Below, one piece after another: positions 36,690-48,825 of a DNA stretch of 64,000 bases. This stretch comes from Vitrella brassicaformis CCMP3155 (lineage: Eukaryota > Protista > Chromerida): assembly GCA_001179505.1 (NCBI GenBank), contig CDMY01000510.1:62001-126000 (forward strand), given 5' to 3'. Below the pieces are notes generated by a model. The model was not told the origin of the DNA. It saw only the letters and a program-made list of their open reading frames with translations, and made no database searches. A program made the translations under genes and the position numbers. Positions within the stretch are counted from its first letter, which is position 1, and the number at the start of each line of letters is the position of its first letter.

Positions 36690-38752
36690 ATGGGAGCTTC
36701 TTCTTCTGCTGCTGCTGCGCCTCAGGCAGAGGTGAGTCAAAGCACAACAAACACACACACTCATCGATGTGTCAGAGCATCACTGACACATTCGTTCGCT
36801 GGTTTGATTGATGTTCGGTTCGTCAGGCAATGCCATCCCCGACGCCGTGCCGTTACAAAGAGGGCAGTCGTGTGCAGATGGTGACCAGCAAGCGGGAGAA
36901 GGGCAAGCAGAGGTGGGTCAAGGCCGACGTGTATCGCATTGAGGAGGGCAGTAGTGGACGGACGGCGCTTCACTTGAGGGAGGTGGGCGGACACCGGGAA
37001 GAGTTCAAAGTGCTGGTGCCGCACAACGAGACCAAGACATCACCGCATGGCCAACAGGTATACGTGACGTCCACACGTCCACTCAATCACCGCACTTGTG
37101 GGGTGGCACGCCCAGGCGCATGGCGGCTTCCGCCTCACTCACAAGAACTTAGCTGATCAGGATGATAACACAACGGTACTCACACACAGCGACACTCGTG
37201 ACGCGGCTCACTCTCATGCTGGCTGCTCTCGCTGACTCAGGCCCTTCGTGGTCTTGGCGACGACCATCTGTCTTGTGTCTTCAGCCTCATGACCCCTCGC
37301 GAGCTGTCAGCCCTCCCAACCCTCTCCAAGCAGTGGCCGCAAGTCCGCAAGGGGGCCCTTCGCCAGCAGACGCACATCGCCATCGACTCTTCTACCGAGG
37401 ACGCCCGCCAATTCTGGGACAACATGACGCCTGAGGAGGCCTTCCAGCTCGGCAAAAAGCTCGTCAACCTGACGGCCCTCACCCTCGTCCAGCCACGCCA
37501 CGAGCGCTCATGGTGTCTGCGCAGCATGATATGCATCGTGGAGGGCCATGCGGCCGGACGTCGGGAGGCGTGCGAGACGAAGGGACAGCAGCACATGTCG
37601 AAGGGATCGCTGGAGACCGTCGAATTGACTACCACCAGCACTACCACCACCAGCAACAGCTCCCCGCCCTTCCAGCTTTCTCCCCTCACCGAGCCCCCGA
37701 CCCTCCATGCCCTCAGGGCCGTATCTGGTGCCGTCCGACAGCACAGTATCCTTGCCTACAGGGGCTGACGCATGCCTGCACTCGAGAGTGTGGAGCTGTG
37801 GGGGGGTGATGCCGACGACCTGGGCCGATTAATCAGCTCGTCTCAGTCGCTGAAAGAGGTTGGGGGGCGTCGGCGGTCATGGGAGTGGTGGGCGGCTGTG
37901 TTTGAGCACTTTCCTGTCGCATCCGCCGGGCAGCCAGGGCCGCTCAGACACCTCCAGACCATCGGAGGGATCACATGGGCCCACAAGGACGAGGGACAAG
38001 TGAGGCGACTGCAGGTAGGCAACCATCACCCAGGGGAGGCCTCATCTGTCTGTGCGCACACACACGAATGACGTCATTTTCTCTTTGTTTCTTTCTAGGA
38101 TGTGCTCTCATCGCGTGGCTGCCGCAGGTCGCTGACAAGGCTCGACGTGGAGATCGCAGCATTCGAGGACCACGACACCCTCTCTGCCCTGCTTGCTGTC
38201 GACGGCTTCATCAACACATGTTGCGTCTCGCCAGACGTGCCGCTCAAGGTGACTGGTGCACCAGGTGACTTCGAGCTGTCGCTCCTCTACGCCGACGCAT
38301 TCCCCCCTCGCCCCTCGCCCTTCATCAAGACGGCCATCAAGGATGCGGCACGACAGGCGATAGCCGTGACCTACAGCCTCAGCCAGCATGACCTCACCCA
38401 CCCTCTTGACGACCCCAGCCAGGCGGCCGTCGAGATGGCATCGAGCCTCTCATTCGACAAGGCGGAGTATGTGGTGGTTTGCGATGCCATTAGCTTCGTC
38501 CCCCCACCAGGCACCCCCCCACCCACCCCCGCCATCATCAACCACCTGCAGCAGCTCCCGGGGGCGAGAGATCTGGATGTCTACAGCGCTGTGGGCGTTG
38601 CTGCTGGCCGGCTGTTGGCACAGAAGATGCCCATGCAGGTGGGGCGTGTGTGCTTTGGCGCAGCTGTCAGTGCGCAGGACAGGATCGGCGTGCTGGAGGC
38701 GCTGGGGGAGAGGGTGGCGGTGGGAAATGTCCTACGGTCAGTCTCACTCTGA
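36690..38752 (+). pseudogene. Member of a lineage-expanded F-box-like family (N-myristoylation site, small beta-barrel, F-box-like motif, repeat-like C-region) with an in-frame TGA
   Basis: MGASSS...; YKEGSRVQMV...RWVKADVYRIE; cag|ALRGLGDDHLSCVFSLMTPRELSALPTLSKQW (F-box-like). The same frame is interrupted by TGA at 37766-37768 (RG*RMPALESV) and then continues for over 300 codons across one intron. Confidence 0.6.
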
Positions 38753-39058: not shown

Positions 39059-42000
39059 ATGGAGGGCAGATCAGGTTCAGACCCACCTGCATCTTCCTCA
39101 GCCAAGGTCATTGAGGTGCCGACGGTGTCGTCCTGCGCCACCAAGGTCACCACGAGCCTGGATCTGGCACTGGACAGCCGACACGACCACAGCACACTGC
39201 CTGTCATCATGGAAGAGGAGACTCTCTCGCGCCGGCTGCGCAAGTGCTGCAAGTGTGTGGTGAGTCCGTCAGTGGGTGGGGGAGGGACACACTGACTGAC
39301 GAACCAAGCAGATCGCTTTGCTTGCGACTGGGTGTGTGCAGCACGAGTCGCTTCAGATCCTCTGCTGCATACCCTCGTCCATCATCTGGAAGCGGAGGGT
39401 AAGGAAACGGCACACACGTCATCCCATCTCCCTGGGATCTTTCTGCGTGCTGTGTTGTGCTGTGTTGTGCTGTGCTGTGTTGTGTGTGGTCGGCTGGGCT
39501 GGCTCCATCTGCAGAAGATGGGTGTGAGCATGCAGAAGATGGACTTCGTCAAGAGGGAGCTGCGCACATTCGTTATCTGGAGCAGGCTGGTGGGTCTGTC
39601 CTTCCTCCCCGATGACAACAACTTTGTGCTCTGGGTCTGGCCTGTCATCATACAAGTGGGTGCCCTGCCCTGCACCACACCTCACCACACTCGCAGAAGG
39701 CCTGCAGCAAATGCTGCACGGGCTGGTTGTCCACGTGATCCATCCATCAATCAGGTGTTGCTGTGGCACACGACATTTGTCAACACGATGGGGCTGTGGT
39801 GGTCCGTCACCTACCAGCACCAGCTGCAGCACATGCAGATGGAAGCATCAGAGGCCAACGGCAGCGATGCGGTACCCATGACTGACTAATCAGAGAGGCA
39901 CGACCCACACACACACATGTTTTGCCTGCTTGTTGTGTGCTGCAGCAGCAGCAGCAGCAGCAGGAGCGTGGCGCCGCGGAGATGAGACAAGAGGAGCCGC
40001 TCGACCCTTTTGTCGTGTTCCTCTTCTTCTCAGCCTCGCTGGCGATTACCGTCTCGTACACCGTGCTGCGCATTCAGTGGTACATCGACACCATGCCATG
40101 AGGGAAGGCCGGCATCCTTTTGTCGTGACTGTGCGTGTGTGTATGGTGCAGGTATAAGAAGGGAGCGACATTCGGCCAGGTGGTGGAGTTCCACCGAGCC
40201 CGCGGCGGGCGCTTCCTGCGTCTGCTGCGTGGGCCGATCGTCGCCAGGCTTGTCATTTCGATTGTGATATGCATCGCGAGCTGGCTCCACTTCACGCTAC
40301 ACGAGTGAGTGAGTGCGGCACCATGGCATGATGAGGGATGGGCGTGGTTGCAGTGTGGTACGGCGGATCGGTCATTCTTTCGTGACTGTATATGTGTGTT
40401 GACCTGCAGGTACATTTCCAAGTGGGTGCGCGGAAAGGCTGTGGGGCAGTACATTATGCCGGGCTCGGAATGGGAGGGCCTCAACGTCTTCGTGCACGTC
40501 AATGTGACGATCTCGGCCTTCCTCGGCTACCTCGTCCAACCCATGATCGCGTGAGCACCGAATGAATGAGACCAACACACACACATGGAGACAAAAACGG
40601 GACACTCCCTGTATGTGTGTGTGTGTCTGTGTCCCACCATCGTCAGCGTGTCTGTGGCGGGTCTTTTGTCGACCATCTGCCAGATGCACACCGCGGCCGT
40701 TAACTGCCTCCTCTGGGAGCTCTCGGAGCCTGTGCGCATCCAGGAGAGGCAGCGCAAGCGGCGCATCAACAAGAAGCTCAGTGCCGGTCAGATCAGCCGC
40801 TACGACAGCTCCGAGCAGCTGCCCCTCATGAACGCCGTGACGGGGCATAGCACCAGTGGCGACCACCTGGCGATGGACGACGACCTGCGCGCGCTGAGTT
40901 CCCTGGTGCAGGGGGGCGGGGAGGGGCGTGAGGGGGCGGGGGAGGACGAAGAAGAGGCTGGCGTCACGTATACACCACAGAGAGTGGCTTACCTTATGGA
41001 TCTTCATCGCAAGTACGTCAGTCAGAAGGGTCAGAGGGAGATCTGACGGTGTTATCGTCATCTTGCTTTGTTGTCGTGTCTGTGTGTGTGTGTGTTTGTT
41101 GGGCCTGAGCCAGAATCGACTCCCTCATCACCCGCAGCAGTCGGGCGGTGCAGCTGCCGATAGCCACCATGTCGCTGCTGTACTTCATCACCTTCCTTAC
41201 TTGCGCCTTCCTCTTCGTCTTCCTACCCAAAAAAACACAAGACGTCAACATGGTCATCTGTGTCATCGGCGTCTTCATTACTGTGGGCATCTCATGCTAC
41301 TGGCTTCTGAGGGCATCCAGCCAAGTGACGGCCAAGTGCCGCAGACTCGGCGAGACAGCGTCCCTCAACCCCTGGTAGCCACCTGCACACAGGCGACCTG
41401 CATACACGGGGGCGCCCATTCTGCCGTCATTCGTCTCTCTTCCTCTTCCTCTTCCTCTGTCTCTGTGCGTTGCGTGCAGCCCCAATGCCCTGCTGCACAT
41501 CGATGTGGACGAGACGGCCTTGGCCGATGGAGAGGTCGAGGGCTTCATCCACCCCCAGACAGAGACGCCCGCCTACCGCGCGTCCATTCTGCGCGACCAC
41601 ACGATCGTCATCTCGGCCACCAATGAGCTCGCCGCCCTCCCGCCCCTCTTCCCTCCGTCTTCGCCCTCCACCAGCCCCTCGCACAGGGACAAGAACGAGC
41701 CATCGCCGGTGGTCGAGTCGCCGCTCTCCCTCACGCCACCCAAACAGAGCCGCTCGCTGTCCGAGGGAGAGGCCGTTTCCAACGGCTCGCCCACCACAGC
41801 CCCATCAGCTGCTGCCTCGTCGAGTGGCGGGCCGCCGTGTGTGATCGGCAAGCAGGATGCCGAAGTCCAGACGAGTGGAAGGGACAGAGCAGAGGACGAT
41901 GCCAGTGTGCGGCGGCCGCCGTGTGAGGACTGGCTGCAGCAGGTGATGCTGGTGCAGTTTTTCTCGAGCACCAGTAGTGGGTGGCGCGTGTATGACAGCC

Positions 42001-42101
42001 TGATCACGCCGGAGTTGCTGTCGAGGGTAGTCTACGGGAGCGTCACGATATTCGCCATCGCCATCCAGCGAGTCGTGCTGTCGTACGGCGAAGTCGTGTA
42101 G
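39059..42101 (+). CDS. Gustatory-receptor-like 7TM protein (7TMIC / GRL / DUF3537-related superfamily)
   Basis: No signal peptide. Seven hydrophobic segments: VLWVWPVIIQ|VLLWH; SLAITVSYTVL; LVISIVICIASWL; VTISAFLGYLVQPMIA|...LLSTICQMH; IATMSLLYFITFLTCAFLFVF; VICVIGVFITVGISCYWLLRASSQVTAKC; and split TM7 VQFFSSTSSGWRVYDSLITPELLSRVVYGSVTIFAIAIQ. Long acidic/Ser-Pro loops precede TM5 and TM7. Confidence 0.72.
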
Positions 42102-43332: not shown

Positions 43333-44965
43333 CTAGTCTATGGTGTATATCAGAAGGTAGTCGAAGAAGACGTCTCCCTCCCCACTGACCACCTTGCCGT
43401 CGCTCCCGCCGTAGTAGCAGTCGGGCGGGCTGATTGGGTCTCCCTCAGTCCGGTAGTTGGTGATGGTCGACAGCCACACGTGGAACAGGTTTTTGGGGAT
43501 CTTCTCGTACGGCCCGTCGGGCGCACTTGGGCCCGTCTTGGCCCTGACCTCGTGGATGAGGTTTCCGTCGAGGTACCAGGCCGCCCGCTCTCTGTCAAAC
43601 CACAAGGAGAAGATGTGGTAGTTGTTGACCAGGCTGAGGCCCCGACCACCAGCGGTGTCTTCATCCTGCTCCGATGACGGCCCGCTCCTGTCTGCATCAA
43701 CTGTGGTGGTCTTCCCCTCATCTGGTCTGTCGACGTCGAGTTGTTTGCCGAACTGCCATCTGCTGCCGGTGAGCCGCTCGAGAGTCAGAGGCTGGTACTC
43801 ACTGTCGTCTCGGCCCATCCTCGGGCCGCCCCCCGACCATCTGTAGACGCCGTAGTAGAATTCGGAGCGGCCGAACGAGCCGAAGTGCTCGAAGACGTCG
43901 AACTCGCTTCTCGGCTCGTATGACATGGGGTGCAGGTTGTTGCCCCCGTCTGAGTATGACGTCCAGAAGGCCTCGTGCCACCCAGGCGTCTTGGTCATCT
44001 TGACACGTGTCTCGAAGTAACCGTACCTGCACCACACCAGAGGCCACATCAAACACAGACAGACGGACCTCAGAGAGTCGTCTCTTTCCGACCGACTGAC
44101 GATTCGCTTACTGGTATCTTCTTCTGGTGACGACCCCCCCACCCGAGAACCACGCGTAACACGTCTCGTTGATCCGGTACCTCCTTCCGCTCGGCAGCGT
44201 CACCTCTTTGGCCTTCTTGTACGCAAATGGCTTCTCGAGATACCGCAGCCGGATGACCAGCTTGCCCCTCTCCACGCTCACGTAGGACGGATCGCAGAAC
44301 GAGTTGCGGCCGCACAGCTGGTGCGGCTGCCGGTACATGAAGGTGTCAAAATCGAGGGAGCCGCCGTCAAAGCCGTCGTAGAGGGCGAACTTGAAGTGCG
44401 GCGGGAGACGCACGGCGGGGCGCGGTCTTGAGGGCAGCCAAAAGGGCGGCGAGTCGGGGACTGTTGCATTTGGCACCCACCACCACACGGGCCGTCTTGG
44501 CCGCCCCTGGCGGTCAAGTGTATCGCGCGCAGGCGAGAAGATTCCTCTTGGCACAGCCAATGGAAACTGCCTTGAATTAGGATAGCCGCCGCCTTGTTGC
44601 GCCACCAGGCCACTATCTTGAGATCTGCCGTCCTTGCTGAGGTTGAGCGGGATGATGATCCAGGCGTCGGCCTCTGCTGGCGGCGGCGGGCGGTCGATGG
44701 CGATGATAAATCCCTCAGACAAGTCGGGGGCGTCGGCAAGGGATATGCTCTGGATGTCGGTCACAATCGGCTGTGCAAAGAAGAACCTCTCGGGATCGTC
44801 ATCCTCCCGCTGCAGCCTTCGCTCGAACAAGGTGGGCCTTCCGTGCCGCTCTGACTTGGTGGCCGGAAATAAGCCTGATGGACCTCTCAGGTAAATGAAG
44901 ATCAGTGCAGAGATGAAGGTCAGTGCACAAACGGCCTCGCGGAGATGACTCTGCGCCTGCTGCAT
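43333..44965 (-). CDS. Glycoside hydrolase family 16 with N-terminal signal/anchor; single intron
   Basis: Catalytic ExDxxE motif SEFDVFEH. Also RYQ|YGYFETRVKM..TPGWHEAFW, NYHIFSLWFDRERAAWYLDG and final VFFDYLLIY. One intron at ~44027-44111. Confidence 0.9.
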
Positions 44966-45496
44966 TGGGATAGCACTGCCAGTGCATGCATGCGACCCGG
45001 TGGGCCAAACCGGGGGCGCCGGCGAGACGCGTCTCAGGTTCCGGAGAGCGCGTGTCGTCCATCTGTGTTGTCCTGCGGCCTGATGGAGGTGATCCGCCTT
45101 GTATTTTCATAGAATGAGAAACCGGGCTTGGCCGTTATGAAGCTCGCGCCACTTCCGTGAGGCTGAGGCGCTGAGCTGGGAGCTGACAGGGTGTACCGAC
45201 GTAGGCCACAGGAGCCGTATCAGGAAGCGCCACAGATCCCCATACCTTCCACGTAAGCAGCGAGCCGGCATAGACGTTAACCCGCGGGGCGGACGGGGCG
45301 TCCAGCAGGCCCTCCCTCTCTGTTGCGCGTGTGTGCTGTCAGATAAACACCGCTGTAGAGATTCCGAGATCCCGCGAAGGAAGTGAGATCGTGAAACACA
45401 TCGTGAAGGAAGATGAGAGCGGCGGGTGCGTTTGAGTGATGTGTGGGCGTGCTCAAGAGGCTGATGAGGCTTGCCGACAAACCTGAAAAGACCATC

Positions 45497-48400
45497 ATGG
45501 ACGCAGCTGACGACACCATGACCAGGTGAGCACAACGAACACCCGAACAAGACACCACACGTTGGCCCGTGACACGTGTGTGTGCTGCATGGATTGTGTC
45601 GTCTGTGTGTGTGTGCGTGTGTGTGTGTGTGTTGTGGGTACTGCAGTGTTGACACCAAGTGTGACAGCACGTCGACAGCGGCGGACACGCCGCCCGCTGC
45701 GCCGCACAAGAGCGACGACACCCCCAAGAGCTCGCTGATGCAGATATCCGAGGCCCTCGCACAGGGCAATCCGCAAGACCTGCCGCCAATTCTGCTCAAC
45801 CGACTCAAACACGCCATCCAAAAACTCAACAAGGTAAAGAACCTGGGTGTGACGATGGATGACAGACGCCACACAACTCGGGAGGGAGCGATGAACGGAC
45901 TGAACTACTTGTTGGTCTGGTCCGTCAATTTGTCTGTCTGCCAGGAGGAGGGCCGTGCCCTTCTAGCGAAGCTTGTCCCGTCCCCCGACAAGCTGCCCAG
46001 CGTGGAGAGCGTAGTGTTCGCCCCCAAGACCCCCGTACCTGCCCCTCCCCACTCCCCCACCTCCTCCGCCTCCCCTCCCCCCCCGTCGCCCCCTGGCTAT
46101 GAGGACGCGCCGCGCAGCGCGAGTCAACGGACCTGGATGACGCCGCCCCTGAGAAGTATCCAGAGCGACCTCGTGTGGCCTGCTAAGTGTGGAAGTTTGG
46201 AGCAGCTCAGTGTGCCGCGATCCTCGGCCTCCCTCGGTGACGCGCCCACCAGCACCAGCACCGGGTCTGGCTCGGAGAGCGGCCATGGCGGGAGCACTGC
46301 CAGCGGTGTGGCCAAGGGAGAAGTTGCCAGCCTACAGGCGCATCAGAAGGACGGTAAGTCAGTGAGGAATGAGTGCACCCTCCCTCCAGACACATGGGCT
46401 GATATATGCTGTCTCTCTCACGTGGATGTGATGTGTGCAGACACTGAAGAGTATCGTCACCTCCTGGAGCGCACCACGCAGTGCGTGCCCGCCCTGGTGC
46501 GGAGCCTTCCGCCACAGCTGACCGACTCGCCATCCACAGCCATCCCCCAGCAGCCCACCATCTCCACCGGGCCACTCCCGCCTCTCATGCCCCTCCCGCC
46601 ACCCCTCCCTCCCGCCATAGAGCCGCCGTCACTGCCCCCACCGCCCGAGGTGGTGCCCACCGAGCCGGCGGTCATCAAGGTGTATGCTGCCCCGGGGCAG
46701 CCTGGTGGAATGCCAAACACGAGCCAGCTCAAGGCGTGTGAGAGCGAGCTGGAGGGCGTGGCCAACGAAATGATGCAGAACGGCATGCTGCCCTCCAGAA
46801 TGGCCGTCAAGTGAGCTGACATACACAGGGTGGATGGAGGTGGGGGAGAGACGTGTGGATCGTGTGTGTGTGTGGTCGGTGCGCATTCAGGTTCAAGAAG
46901 CATTTGCGGACTCTGACGATGGAGACGACGGCCGTGCTGCGCCGCTCCGAGACCCTCAAGACGCAGAACGACACGCTCAAGAAGCTGATGCTCACGCCCA
47001 AGGAGGCCCCTCCCTCCCCCTCCCCCTCCTCACCCAGCAGCACCGGCACACCCGACCCGACACTGTCGATAGACCAGCTGCTGCGTGAGGTGGCCCTCAC
47101 CCCACCCCACGAGGCCACCGTGGCGGCGTCGCCCGTCATTCAGATGTTCAAGAGCCGGCTGCTGGAGCACATTGAGACCTACATCAACAAGCGCGAGCGA
47201 GAGCTCAAGGAGAGCGTCACAGTCATCCGGGAGAGGGACCAAGAGGTAGGTATCTGACACACAACAAACACGCCTTACACACGAGGGCGTTGAGCGGAAG
47301 AACATAGTGAGTGTGTGCCTTTGTTGTGTTCTGTGGGTGCCTGCAGGAGATGAATGTGTTGAAAGGCGAGGTGGACCGTCTGCAGGAGGAGGTCCCGCTG
47401 CTCAAGAAGACCATCGAAGCCATAGGCGACAGAGAGTGAGCCACCCACCCACCCACACACGCACACACACACACATACGTCGTCACTCATCACGCCCCAA
47501 CCCACCAGCCCACCACACTCGACCTCTCTCCCTCTCCCTCTCTCTGTGTGTGTGTGTCAGCCTCCACCGCATGGAGGATCGTGTGATGCGTGCACTGCGC
47601 GACTACCGCGACATTCGCGAAAACGACCGCAATAGGATCGAGGCCCTCGAGAAGGAGCGCAAGGAGATGGAGGAGACGCTCGAGCGGTGCAAGGTGGAGC
47701 ACCGCACCAACACCGCCAAAATCACCCAGTACTCCGACAAGGTCGCGCATCTGCAGCGGGCCGTGCGCGAGTACAAGGGGGCGGAGAAGCTCAACGCCAC
47801 CACCATGGCCGGACTCAAGATATTCACCGACGAGTGAGTGAGACAGACCTTCTTCCCAAACACTGTACAGTGGCTGCCTGGCTGTGTGTGTGTGTGATGG
47901 GTGTAGCCTGAAGGGTGCTCTGTCGAAGGTGTTGGGTGAGAAGCGTAGTCTGCAGCAGCAGCTGAGCGTCATGGAGCAGCGGCTCACGGCGTCCGAACGG
48001 GACGCTGCCATCCTGAGAGAAGAGATCAACCGGTCGGCACACCACACCACCAACCACAACCACACCGGGTGTCTGCACCCCACCCGTGCTGCACACTACA
48101 CTTGTGCGTGCGTCTGCCTGTGTGTGTGTGTGTGTGTGTGTCTGCAGTATGAAGTCATCGCCAGCCGGTGACCCCGTGTTCATCCAACGTGCTCGAAAAA
48201 GGTCGAAATAAGGTGGTGGTGCACACATGGCCACGCATAGCCATAAAAGCCGCCTGTCTGTCTGGATATGTGGCCCATCCCCCGTCAGTTTTGAGCAGGA
48301 GGTAGTCCACCGCGAGCGTATTGAGGCGCTGGAGGGCCAGCTCCGCACCCTACGCAACAACGAGAACCTGCAGAGAGCGGCCATCAAAGCCATCACCGAG

Positions 48401-48825
48401 TCGCTCCCCGCCGAGTTCCAAAAGTGAGCTGCATGAGGCCAACACACATCGGTGTCCTCTTCATCTCATCTGTCCGAGTGTGTCGGGTGGTTGGCTGGTT
48501 GCTTGCAGGCGTGATCGCGCTGTCAAGGCCCTGCAGGACGAGAAGAATGCACTCACAGAAGCGCTCAAGATGGGCAAGGTACACACACACACGCACACAC
48601 CTGCACACCAGCCACACACACAACACAGATGTGCCCATTCCACCTCCTTGGTCGCTTACTGTCTGTCAGCTTCGCGAGGAGAGCGCCCTATGTGCGTTGG
48701 AGAAGCAGACGAGCGAGGCGCAGGCACTGCGTGAGGAGCTGCATCGCATGAAGACCGTCGGGCCGCCCAACAGGACGTCGTCATCGGGATCGTCGCCCGC
48801 ATCCCTATTCCACTACCAACCGTAG
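45497..48825 (+). CDS. Pro/Ser-rich and long coiled-coil protein of unknown function, multi-exon
   Basis: MDAADDTMT start with GT donor. Heptad-rich exons (EHIETYINKRERELKESV; EALEKERKEMEETLERCK; SLQQQLSVMEQRLTASERD; ALREELHRMK). Final stop at 48823-48825. Confidence 0.7.

What the first reader, a model, noticed from the sequence alone, without database searches (positions are those of the whole stretch)
39059..42101. Insect odorant/gustatory-receptor-like 7TM ion channel candidate with a large loop insertion
Seen: 7 TM segments, no signal peptide, C..H at the end of TM4, long IL2, A..VT.KC after TM6, and a split TM7 (F......GWRV...ITPELL....VTIFAIAIQ). Established: this arrangement characterises the 7TMIC superfamily (insect ORs/GRs, plant DUF3537, and unicellular GRLs including reported chromerid members). 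Inference: this could be a ligand-gated chemosensory channel in a unicellular alga. A roughly 150-aa Ser/Pro-rich insert between TM6 and TM7 is much longer than the short IL3 of insect receptors and could be a phospho-regulatory module.
Basis: partly seen in the sequence, partly recalled or inferred. Interest (0 to 1): 0.75.

Follow-up and report, generated by a model that had tools for sequence, protein, structure and literature searches.

The report
Known Vitrella gustatory-receptor-like gene VbraGRL3
The gene is real, transcribed and does belong to the insect odorant/gustatory-receptor channel superfamily, but it is letter for letter VbraGRL3 of Vitrella brassicaformis, published in 2020 and structurally compared with Orco in 2023, so nothing about the call is new.

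Summary
Window 39059-42101 (+) holds a 10-exon, GT-AG gene. Its 730-aa product is identical to CEM19221.1 / UniProt A0A0G4FWI7 of Vitrella brassicaformis CCMP3155. The window DNA matches assembly GCA_001179505.1, contig CDMY01000510.1, exactly.

Tests run here agree:
- Pfam 7tm_7 passes its gathering score (29.7 against 26.6 bits).
- The ESM Atlas model of this protein matches plant DUF3537 models (TM 0.72 over 368 residues); every other match scores 0.22 or less.
- Hydropathy and the positive-inside rule fit an N-in 7TM topology.
- Spliced contigs in three public runs show seven introns directly and imply the other two, so the gene is transcribed.

The long Ser/Pro-rich loop between TM6 and TM7 is real: 168 aa between the VTAKC and LVQ landmarks. 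Paralogs VbraGRL4 and VbraGRL5 have it too (144 and 212 aa), and the 2020 paper already notes a long IL3 in all DUF3537 proteins. A roughly 60-aa extra stretch in IL2 is specific to GRL3. Channel function and phospho-regulation remain inference.

Other first-reader notes in this genome flag 7TMIC-like genes on other DNA. Verdict: call supported, already known, low interest.

The parts
39059..39259 (+). Exon 1 (aa 1-67): start codon and hydrophilic N-terminus with the Cys-rich KCCKCV stretch
   Evidence: Donor GTGAGT. The joint 39258->39341 appears in spliced contigs of runs X1, X6 and X7.
39342..39398 (+). Exon 2, a 57-nt mini-exon (aa 68-86, HESLQILCCIPSSIIWKRR)
   Evidence: Missed in my first model. 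Present in the published sequence. Both flanking joints are seen in X1, X6 and X7. AG/GT boundaries.
39515..39655 (+). Exon 3 (aa 87-133): amphipathic pre-TM1 stretch and the start of TM1
39755..39871 (+). Exon 4 (aa 134-172): end of TM1 and the start of extracellular loop 1
   Evidence: Joint 39655->39755.
39946..40079 (+). Exon 5 (aa 173-217): CAG-repeat poly-Q, then TM2 with the conserved YTVLRxQW
   Evidence: Intron 4 is implied by the coordinates of record 6 in X6; the repeat itself was skipped by the reads tool.
40152..40304 (+). Exon 6 (aa 217-268): intracellular loop 1 and TM3
   Evidence: Joints 40078->40151 and 40304->40410.
40410..40550 (+). Exon 7 (aa 268-315): extracellular loop 2 and the start of TM4
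40647..41012 (+). Exon 8 (aa 315-437): rest of the long TM4 (ICQMH) and IL2, including an acidic/Gly-rich stretch of about 60 aa that is absent from GRL4 and GRL5
   Evidence: IL2 proxy 109 aa against 49 and 45.
41114..41374 (+). Exon 9 (aa 437-524): TM5, TM6 and the VTAKCRRL motif. This is the core of the Pfam 7tm_7 match, which covers residues 424-518 (window 40972-41357).
   Evidence: Acceptor at 41114 is confirmed by the joint 41012->41114 in X1 and X6. 7tm_7 scores 29.7 bits. This exon's query (window:41139-41372) found only GRL3, GRL5 and GRL4 among 1.84 billion representatives.
41480..42101 (+). Exon 10 (aa 524-730 plus stop): the Ser/Pro-rich IL3 (aa 513-671, window 41340-41921), then TM7a/TM7b (41922-42080) with TIFAIAIQR (42045-42071)
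   Evidence: essentially no secondary structure over 522-671: one 6-residue helix, 557-562; block pLDDT about 23-39. Joint 41373->41479 in X1, X6 and X7.

Best explanation
This is the nuclear gene for VbraGRL3 (CEM19221.1, UniProt A0A0G4FWI7) of the chromerid alga Vitrella brassicaformis CCMP3155. [quoted passage not shown]

Shown:
- identity to the published protein;
- the 10-exon structure and transcription;
- a significant 7tm_7 profile match;
- a predicted fold that matches DUF3537, and Orco in the literature.

Inferred by homology only:
- The N-terminus is cytoplasmic.
- The protein assembles as a tetramer. The cytoplasmic extensions of TM4-6 and TM7a would form an anchor domain, and TM7b (TxxAxxxQR) would line a cation pore.
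- An unknown ligand opens the pore.
- The long disordered IL2 and IL3 loops face the cytoplasm, where they could take regulatory inputs.
For: Identity:
- The spliced product from the window equals P0001 exactly.
- P0001 is CEM19221.1 / A0A0G4FWI7 by exact look-up.
- The window DNA is identical over 23,043 nt to GCA_001179505.1 CDMY01000510.1:91059-114101, where the gene is called at the same ends.
- CEM19221.1 is listed as VbraGRL3, with this sequence printed.

Family:
- Pfam 7tm_7: E 5.4e-7, 29.7 bits against a cut-off of 26.6; residues 424-518 match profile positions 211-305 of 370, the expected TM5-TM6 region.
- The Atlas's own model (pTM 0.58) best matches a plant DUF3537 cluster: TM 0.72 by target, 368 residues aligned, query 93-728; all other rows score 0.22 or less.
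- Language-model features lie nearest DUF3537 (0.94) and 7tm_7/GUR clusters (0.92-0.94).

Topology:
- Seven hydropathy peaks.
- Intracellular loops of 32, 126 and 204 aa against extracellular loops of 51, 39 and 6 aa.
- K+R near the TM ends: 18 inside against 9 outside.
- Published Philius prediction: N-in, 7TM.

Expression:
- GT..AG joints for the introns appear in contigs of three runs from three studies.
- One 3492-nt contig spans the whole mRNA.
Against: - No unicellular GRL has been shown to conduct ions. The 2023 paper says function is unknown in most cases.
- Only 2 of the 4 positions of the animal TM7 motif are kept (T713 and Q720).
- The published TOPCONS consensus for this protein gives 4 TMs with the N-terminus outside.
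- My own AlphaFold2 run, with a 3-sequence alignment, was poor (pLDDT 41.6, pTM 0.30).
- Foldseek on that model gave only non-significant matches, although six of the top eight were insect OR or Orco chains (E 1.6-4.4).
- Sequence searches against PDB chains found no Or or Gr.
- No Pfam DUF3537 hit at E up to 10.
Confidence: 0.9

Rival explanations
1. It has the 7TMIC fold but is not a ligand-gated channel. Like the structurally similar PHTF proteins, it would have another membrane role, such as scaffold, transporter or organelle protein. The long loops would then be interaction platforms rather than gating regulators.
For: - Function is unknown for all unicellular GRLs.
- The TM7 motif is only half conserved.
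- The loops and N-terminus make up about 45% of the protein.
- The clade looks very narrow: only Vitrella GRL3, GRL4 and GRL5 were recovered with the TM5-TM6 query.
Against: - Every 7TMIC tested functionally so far (insect Ors and Grs) is a cation channel; this is established knowledge and is the framing of PMC9998090.
- TM7b residues T, A, Q and R are invariant across GRL3, GRL4 and GRL5, as expected for a pore or subunit-interface helix.
Confidence: 0.3
2. It is a GPCR-like or otherwise unrelated N-out multipass protein, and its resemblance to Ors and Grs is chance.
For: - The published TOPCONS consensus gives the N-terminus outside with 4 TMs.
- No significant PDB sequence hit.
- My own AF2 model is of low confidence.
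Against: - The 7tm_7 match is above Pfam's curated cut-off and falls at the right profile positions.
- There is no GPCR family hit at E up to 10.
- The Atlas structural match to DUF3537 is TM 0.72, against 0.22 or less for everything else.
- The positive-inside count favours N-in.
Confidence: 0.03
3. The gene model is an annotation artefact: a chance chain of ORFs in GC-rich DNA.
For: Many overlapping ORFs occur on both strands of this roughly 59% GC region.
Against: - All nine introns are GT..AG.
- Seven of them are seen directly as joints in spliced contigs from three studies, and the other two are implied by the coordinates of one contig.
- The product has paralogs with 25-32% identity and many invariant columns.
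Confidence: 0.01

Closest known systems
VbraGRL3 (CEM19221.1, A0A0G4FWI7), Benton et al. 2020 eLife 9:e62507; Benton & Himmel 2023 eLife 12:e85537
   Same: Identical 730-aa sequence, the same genome assembly and the same gene ends.
   Different: Nothing differs.
VbraGRL4 (CEM01650.1) and VbraGRL5 (CEM10760.1), paralogs
   Same: 25-32% identity. Shared motifs: YTVLRxQW, ICxxH, VTAKCxRL, LVQ[YF]..WRVY and TxxAxxxQR. Long IL3 of 144 and 212 aa.
   Different: GRL3 has a shorter N-terminus, a poly-Q stretch in extracellular loop 1, an IL2 about 60 aa longer, and a more Ser/Pro-rich IL3 (32% S+T+P against 20-23%).
Plant DUF3537 proteins (Pfam PF12056)
   Same: Best structural match of the Atlas model (TM 0.72 over 368 residues). 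Feature score 0.94. A long IL3 is noted for all DUF3537 proteins.
   Different: No PF12056 sequence hit at E up to 10. GRL3 is about 300 aa longer.
Insect Orco, Ors and Grs (Pfam 7tm_6 / 7tm_7; for example Orco 6C70)
   Different: About 14% identity. IL3 is around 170-200 aa instead of short. Only T and Q of the TYhhhhhQF motif are kept. There are no functional data.

Membership tests
7TMIC superfamily (Or/Gr/GRL/DUF3537) | Significant profile similarity to a known Gr/GRL/DUF3537 family | tested here: met
   Pfam 7tm_7 PF08395: E 5.4e-7, 29.7 bits against a gathering score of 26.6; residues 424-518 match profile positions 211-305 of 370. The single exon alone gave only E 0.024.
7TMIC superfamily (Or/Gr/GRL/DUF3537) | Seven TM helices with an intracellular N-terminus | tested here: inconclusive
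   Seven hydropathy peaks. The K+R count is 18 inside against 9 outside for the N-in model. Published Philius gives N-in 7TM, but the TOPCONS consensus gives 4 TMs with N out.
7TMIC superfamily (Or/Gr/GRL/DUF3537) | Intracellular loops longer than extracellular loops | tested here: met
   IL1, IL2 and IL3 are 32, 126 and 204 aa; EL1, EL2 and EL3 are 51, 39 and 6 aa, using the Philius-like TM boundaries.
7TMIC superfamily (Or/Gr/GRL/DUF3537) | Length of about 350-500 aa (criterion ii of Benton et al. 2020) | tested here: not met
   The protein is 730 aa. The excess lies in the N-terminus, IL2 and IL3. The authors accepted it regardless ('most or all' criteria).
7TMIC superfamily (Or/Gr/GRL/DUF3537) | TM7 motif (T/S)Yhhhhh(Q/K/E)(F/L/M) | tested here: inconclusive
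   TIFAIAIQR keeps T713 and Q720, which is 2 of 4 positions. The paper calls the motif diagnostic but not definitive, and reports two conserved positions for most VbraGRLs.
7TMIC superfamily (Or/Gr/GRL/DUF3537) | Orco-like fold: characteristic TM packing, long TM4-6 anchor, split TM7 | tested here: met
7TMIC superfamily (Or/Gr/GRL/DUF3537) | Tetrameric ligand-gated cation channel activity | not testable with these tools
   This needs electrophysiology or cryo-EM. No unicellular GRL has been tested.
Animal GRL genes | [quoted passage not shown] | tested here: inconclusive
   The last intron (41375-41479) lies just after TM6, 207 codons before the stop. The final exon encodes IL3 and all of TM7. 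The paper says intron positions are not conserved between kingdoms. Animal intron positions were not measured here.
Plant DUF3537 (PF12056) | Match to the PF12056 profile | tested here: not met
   No PF12056 row at E up to 10. The resemblance is in structure, features and the long IL3 only.
GPCRs (7TM, N-out) | Extracellular N-terminus and a match to a GPCR family profile | tested here: not met
   No GPCR Pfam family at E up to 10. The positive-inside count favours N-in.

The most novel reading that the evidence does not exclude
The disordered cytoplasmic loops of the GRL3-6 clade may be lineage-specific regulatory modules that control gating or trafficking of a protist 7TMIC channel, by phosphorylation or calmodulin-type binding. 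The loops are the 144-212-aa IL3 and, in GRL3 only, an extra stretch of about 60 aa in IL2 after a basic segment, RIQERQRKRRINKK. This would resemble the regulation reported for the longer IL2 of Orco. The clade may also be confined to Vitrella.
Probability: 0.15. Interest if true: 0.35.

Novelty: already known. Interest (0 to 1): 0.1.

Why it matters
Unicellular GRLs matter for one question: whether the insect chemoreceptor channel fold dates back to the last common eukaryotic ancestor. This gene is one of the six Vitrella sequences on which that published argument already rests.

Re-finding it shows that the first-stage reader can recognise a 7TMIC from raw spliced DNA. It adds no new biology beyond small annotations: transcript support for the introns, and loop-length comparisons. 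What remains open is functional: whether any protist GRL conducts ions, and what gates it.

Tried and rejected
- **First gene model.** My 9-exon, 703-aa model was wrong in two places. It missed the 57-nt exon 2 and used the acceptor at 41138 instead of 41114. It was corrected from the published sequence, the paralog alignment and the spliced contigs.
- **Per-exon Pfam scan.** It gave only a sub-threshold 7tm_7 hint (E 0.024).
- **Three word-index protein searches.** They returned only the protein itself and missed even the known paralogs. They say nothing about relatives.
- **PDB sequence searches.** The single exon, the full protein and the 3-sequence profile gave only chance hits.
- **JGI metagenome scan with the paralog alignment.** 68 pattern matches, none confirmed.
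- **AlphaFold2 with a 3-sequence alignment.** It gave pLDDT 41.6, unusable for a fold claim. Foldseek on it had no significant match.
- **Joined spliced model.** It was never typed into or sent to a search tool. It was built only inside local scripts, to check the reading frame, to run local hydropathy and composition counts and to test equality with the database protein. Searches were made exon by exon by reference, and then with the database protein P0001 that a tool returned.

Full report
**What is there.** The window is GC-rich (about 59%) eukaryotic DNA with short GT-AG introns. Between 39059 and 42101 on the + strand I built a spliced model by hand. My first version had 9 exons and 703 aa. 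The corrected version has 10 exons and 730 aa:
- 39059-39259
- 39342-39398
- 39515-39655
- 39755-39871
- 39946-40079
- 40152-40304
- 40410-40550
- 40647-41012
- 41114-41374
- 41480-42101

All nine introns are 72-116 nt and GT..AG.

**How the spliced model was handled.** The joined sequence was never typed or sent to a search tool. It was built only inside local scripts, for frame checks, for local hydropathy and composition counts and to test identity with a database protein.

**Identity.** A full-text search led to Benton et al. 2020 (eLife, PMC7746228). Its Table 1 lists six Vitrella brassicaformis candidate GRLs. Its supplementary file prints VbraGRL3 = CEM19221.1, 730 aa. That sequence starts MEGRSGSDPPASSSAKVIEV and ends FAIAIQRVVLSYGEVV.

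- An exhaustive HMMER search with the TM5-TM6 exon (window:41139-41372) returned a 730-aa protein, P0001, at 100% identity.
- My spliced product equals P0001 exactly.
- An exact look-up names P0001 as CEM19221.1 / UniRef100_A0A0G4FWI7, Vitrella brassicaformis CCMP3155.
- The gene is called with the same ends on GCA_001179505.1 contig CDMY01000510.1.
- 23,043 nt of that contig are identical to window 29059-52101.

The finding is therefore the published VbraGRL3 gene.

**Is it transcribed, and is the model right?** Contigs of three public runs from three studies (X1, X6, X7) carry the spliced form. Joints with GT..AG ends are listed for introns 1, 2, 3, 5, 6, 8 and 9. Introns 4 and 7 follow from the coordinates of one 3492-nt contig in X6 that spans the whole mRNA. 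Run X8 carries unspliced, genomic pieces. This confirms the 57-nt mini-exon and the 41114 acceptor, and shows that the gene is expressed. Contigs cannot give expression level or transcript ends.

**Is it a 7TMIC?**

Tests run here:
1. The full-length protein matches Pfam 7tm_7 at E 5.4e-7 and 29.7 bits, above the curated cut-off of 26.6. Residues 424-518 align to profile positions 211-305 of 370, which is the end of IL2 through TM6. The single exon alone reached only E 0.024.
2. The ESM Atlas holds this sequence, with a model of pTM 0.58. Its best structural neighbour is a plant DUF3537 cluster, with TM 0.72 normalised by the target and 368 residues aligned across query 93-728. Every other row scores 0.22 or less. 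By language-model features, the nearest named clusters are DUF3537 (0.94) and arthropod or nematode 7tm_7/GUR clusters (0.92-0.94).
3. Hydropathy gives seven strong peaks. With TM boundaries 123-141, 193-212, 245-263, 303-325, 452-473, 480-502 and 707-724, the intracellular loops are 32, 126 and 204 aa and the extracellular loops are 51, 39 and 6 aa. K+R within 15 aa of the TM ends is 18 inside against 9 outside.

Literature for this same accession:
- The published Philius prediction is N-in with 7 TMs, but the TOPCONS consensus is 4 TMs with N out. Sequence-based topology prediction is therefore not unanimous.

The TM7 motif is TIFAIAIQR. It keeps 2 of the 4 animal positions, as the paper says for most VbraGRLs.

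My own AlphaFold2 run had only three sequences to align and failed (pLDDT 41.6, pTM 0.30). Its secondary structure still shows very long helices at the TM4, TM5, TM6 and TM7 positions: 288-360, 425-472, 481-521 and 672-729. Foldseek on that model gave no significant match, although six of the top eight rows were insect OR or Orco chains (E 1.6-4.4). I count this as a hint only.

**The loop.** Between the conserved VTAKC (after TM6) and LVQF (start of TM7a) lie 168 residues. Of these, 32% are Ser, Thr or Pro. There are seven [ST]P sites, one RSLS site and essentially no predicted structure (one 6-residue helix only). The loop is real, but it is not special to this gene:
- VbraGRL5 has 212 residues there and VbraGRL4 has 144, with little sequence conservation.
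- The 2020 paper already remarks on the long IL3 of all DUF3537 proteins and the long IL2 of green-algal members.

What is specific to GRL3 is an IL2 about 60 aa longer than in GRL4 and GRL5 (109 against 49 and 45 by landmark distance). That extra stretch is acidic and Gly-rich and follows a basic stretch, RIQERQRKRRINKK. A regulatory role for either loop is inference by analogy with Orco's IL2.

**Relatives.**
- The 78-aa TM5-TM6 query found only three representatives among 1.84 billion: GRL3, GRL5 and a GRL4 fragment.
- That fragment (P0003) is identical to residues 272-720 of VbraGRL4. It sits as one uninterrupted ORF on a 2072-nt JGI contig, so it probably comes from a transcript assembly.
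- The three word-index searches returned only the query itself and missed known paralogs, so they are uninformative.
- A JGI metagenome scan found nothing.
- With such a short exhaustive query, restriction of the clade to Vitrella is not established.

**Mechanism.**
- Shown: identity, gene structure, transcription, family-level sequence match and predicted fold.
- Inferred from the insect structures described in the cited papers: a tetramer whose subunits contact through the cytoplasmic extensions of TM4-6 and TM7a. TM7b would line a cation pore; its residues T713, A716, Q720 and R721 are invariant among GRL3, GRL4 and GRL5. The ligand is unknown.

I put family membership at about 0.9 and channel function at about 0.5. 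No unicellular GRL has been tested.

**Verdict.** Novelty is 'already known' and interest is low. Two other first-reader notes in this genome describe 7TMIC-like genes on other DNA. I did not test them.

Noticed in passing
window 39481-39488, 39906-39917, 40135-40142, 40575-40584, 40614-40625, 41081-41094: Five of the nine introns (2, 4, 5, 7 and 8) carry short CA or TG dinucleotide tracts; intron 7 has an AC tract followed by a TG tract. The bins around 39428-39534 and 41033-41139 show much higher summed contig depth, with many loose ends, so these tracts are repeated elsewhere in the genome or transcriptome. A first-reader note on this window (s1-227166) raises complementary intronic microsatellites.
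   Followed up: partly
window 39946-39963: A (CAG)6 repeat at the start of exon 5 encodes QQQQQQ in the predicted extracellular loop 1. It is absent from paralogs GRL4 and GRL5. The reads tool skipped this repeat.
   Followed up: no
window 43333-44965 (-): The convergent downstream gene is annotated as a 515-aa product. One of its ORFs hits Glyco_hydro_16 (E 9.5e-7, 28.9 bits against a cut-off of 22). The 3492-nt X6 contig runs about 1.1 kb past 42200. Either the GRL3 3' UTR is long, or the assembler merged the two convergent transcripts.
   Followed up: no
L001 282-1631 (JGI sample 3300017148, contig Ga0186167_105170): A 2072-nt JGI contig encodes, as one uninterrupted ORF, a protein identical to residues 272-720 of VbraGRL4 (CEM01650.1). 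It is probably a transcript assembly, which suggests that GRL4 is also expressed.
   Followed up: partly
window 36690-38752 (+) and 45464-48825 (+): The flanking annotated genes (522-aa and 761-aa products) have no Pfam family on record, and none was found in the ORFs I scanned.
   Followed up: no
window 39236-39259 and 39342-39398: The cytoplasmic N-terminus has clustered cysteines (KCCKCV, then LCCIPSS in the mini-exon). These are possible palmitoylation sites. This is inference from the sequence only.
   Followed up: no
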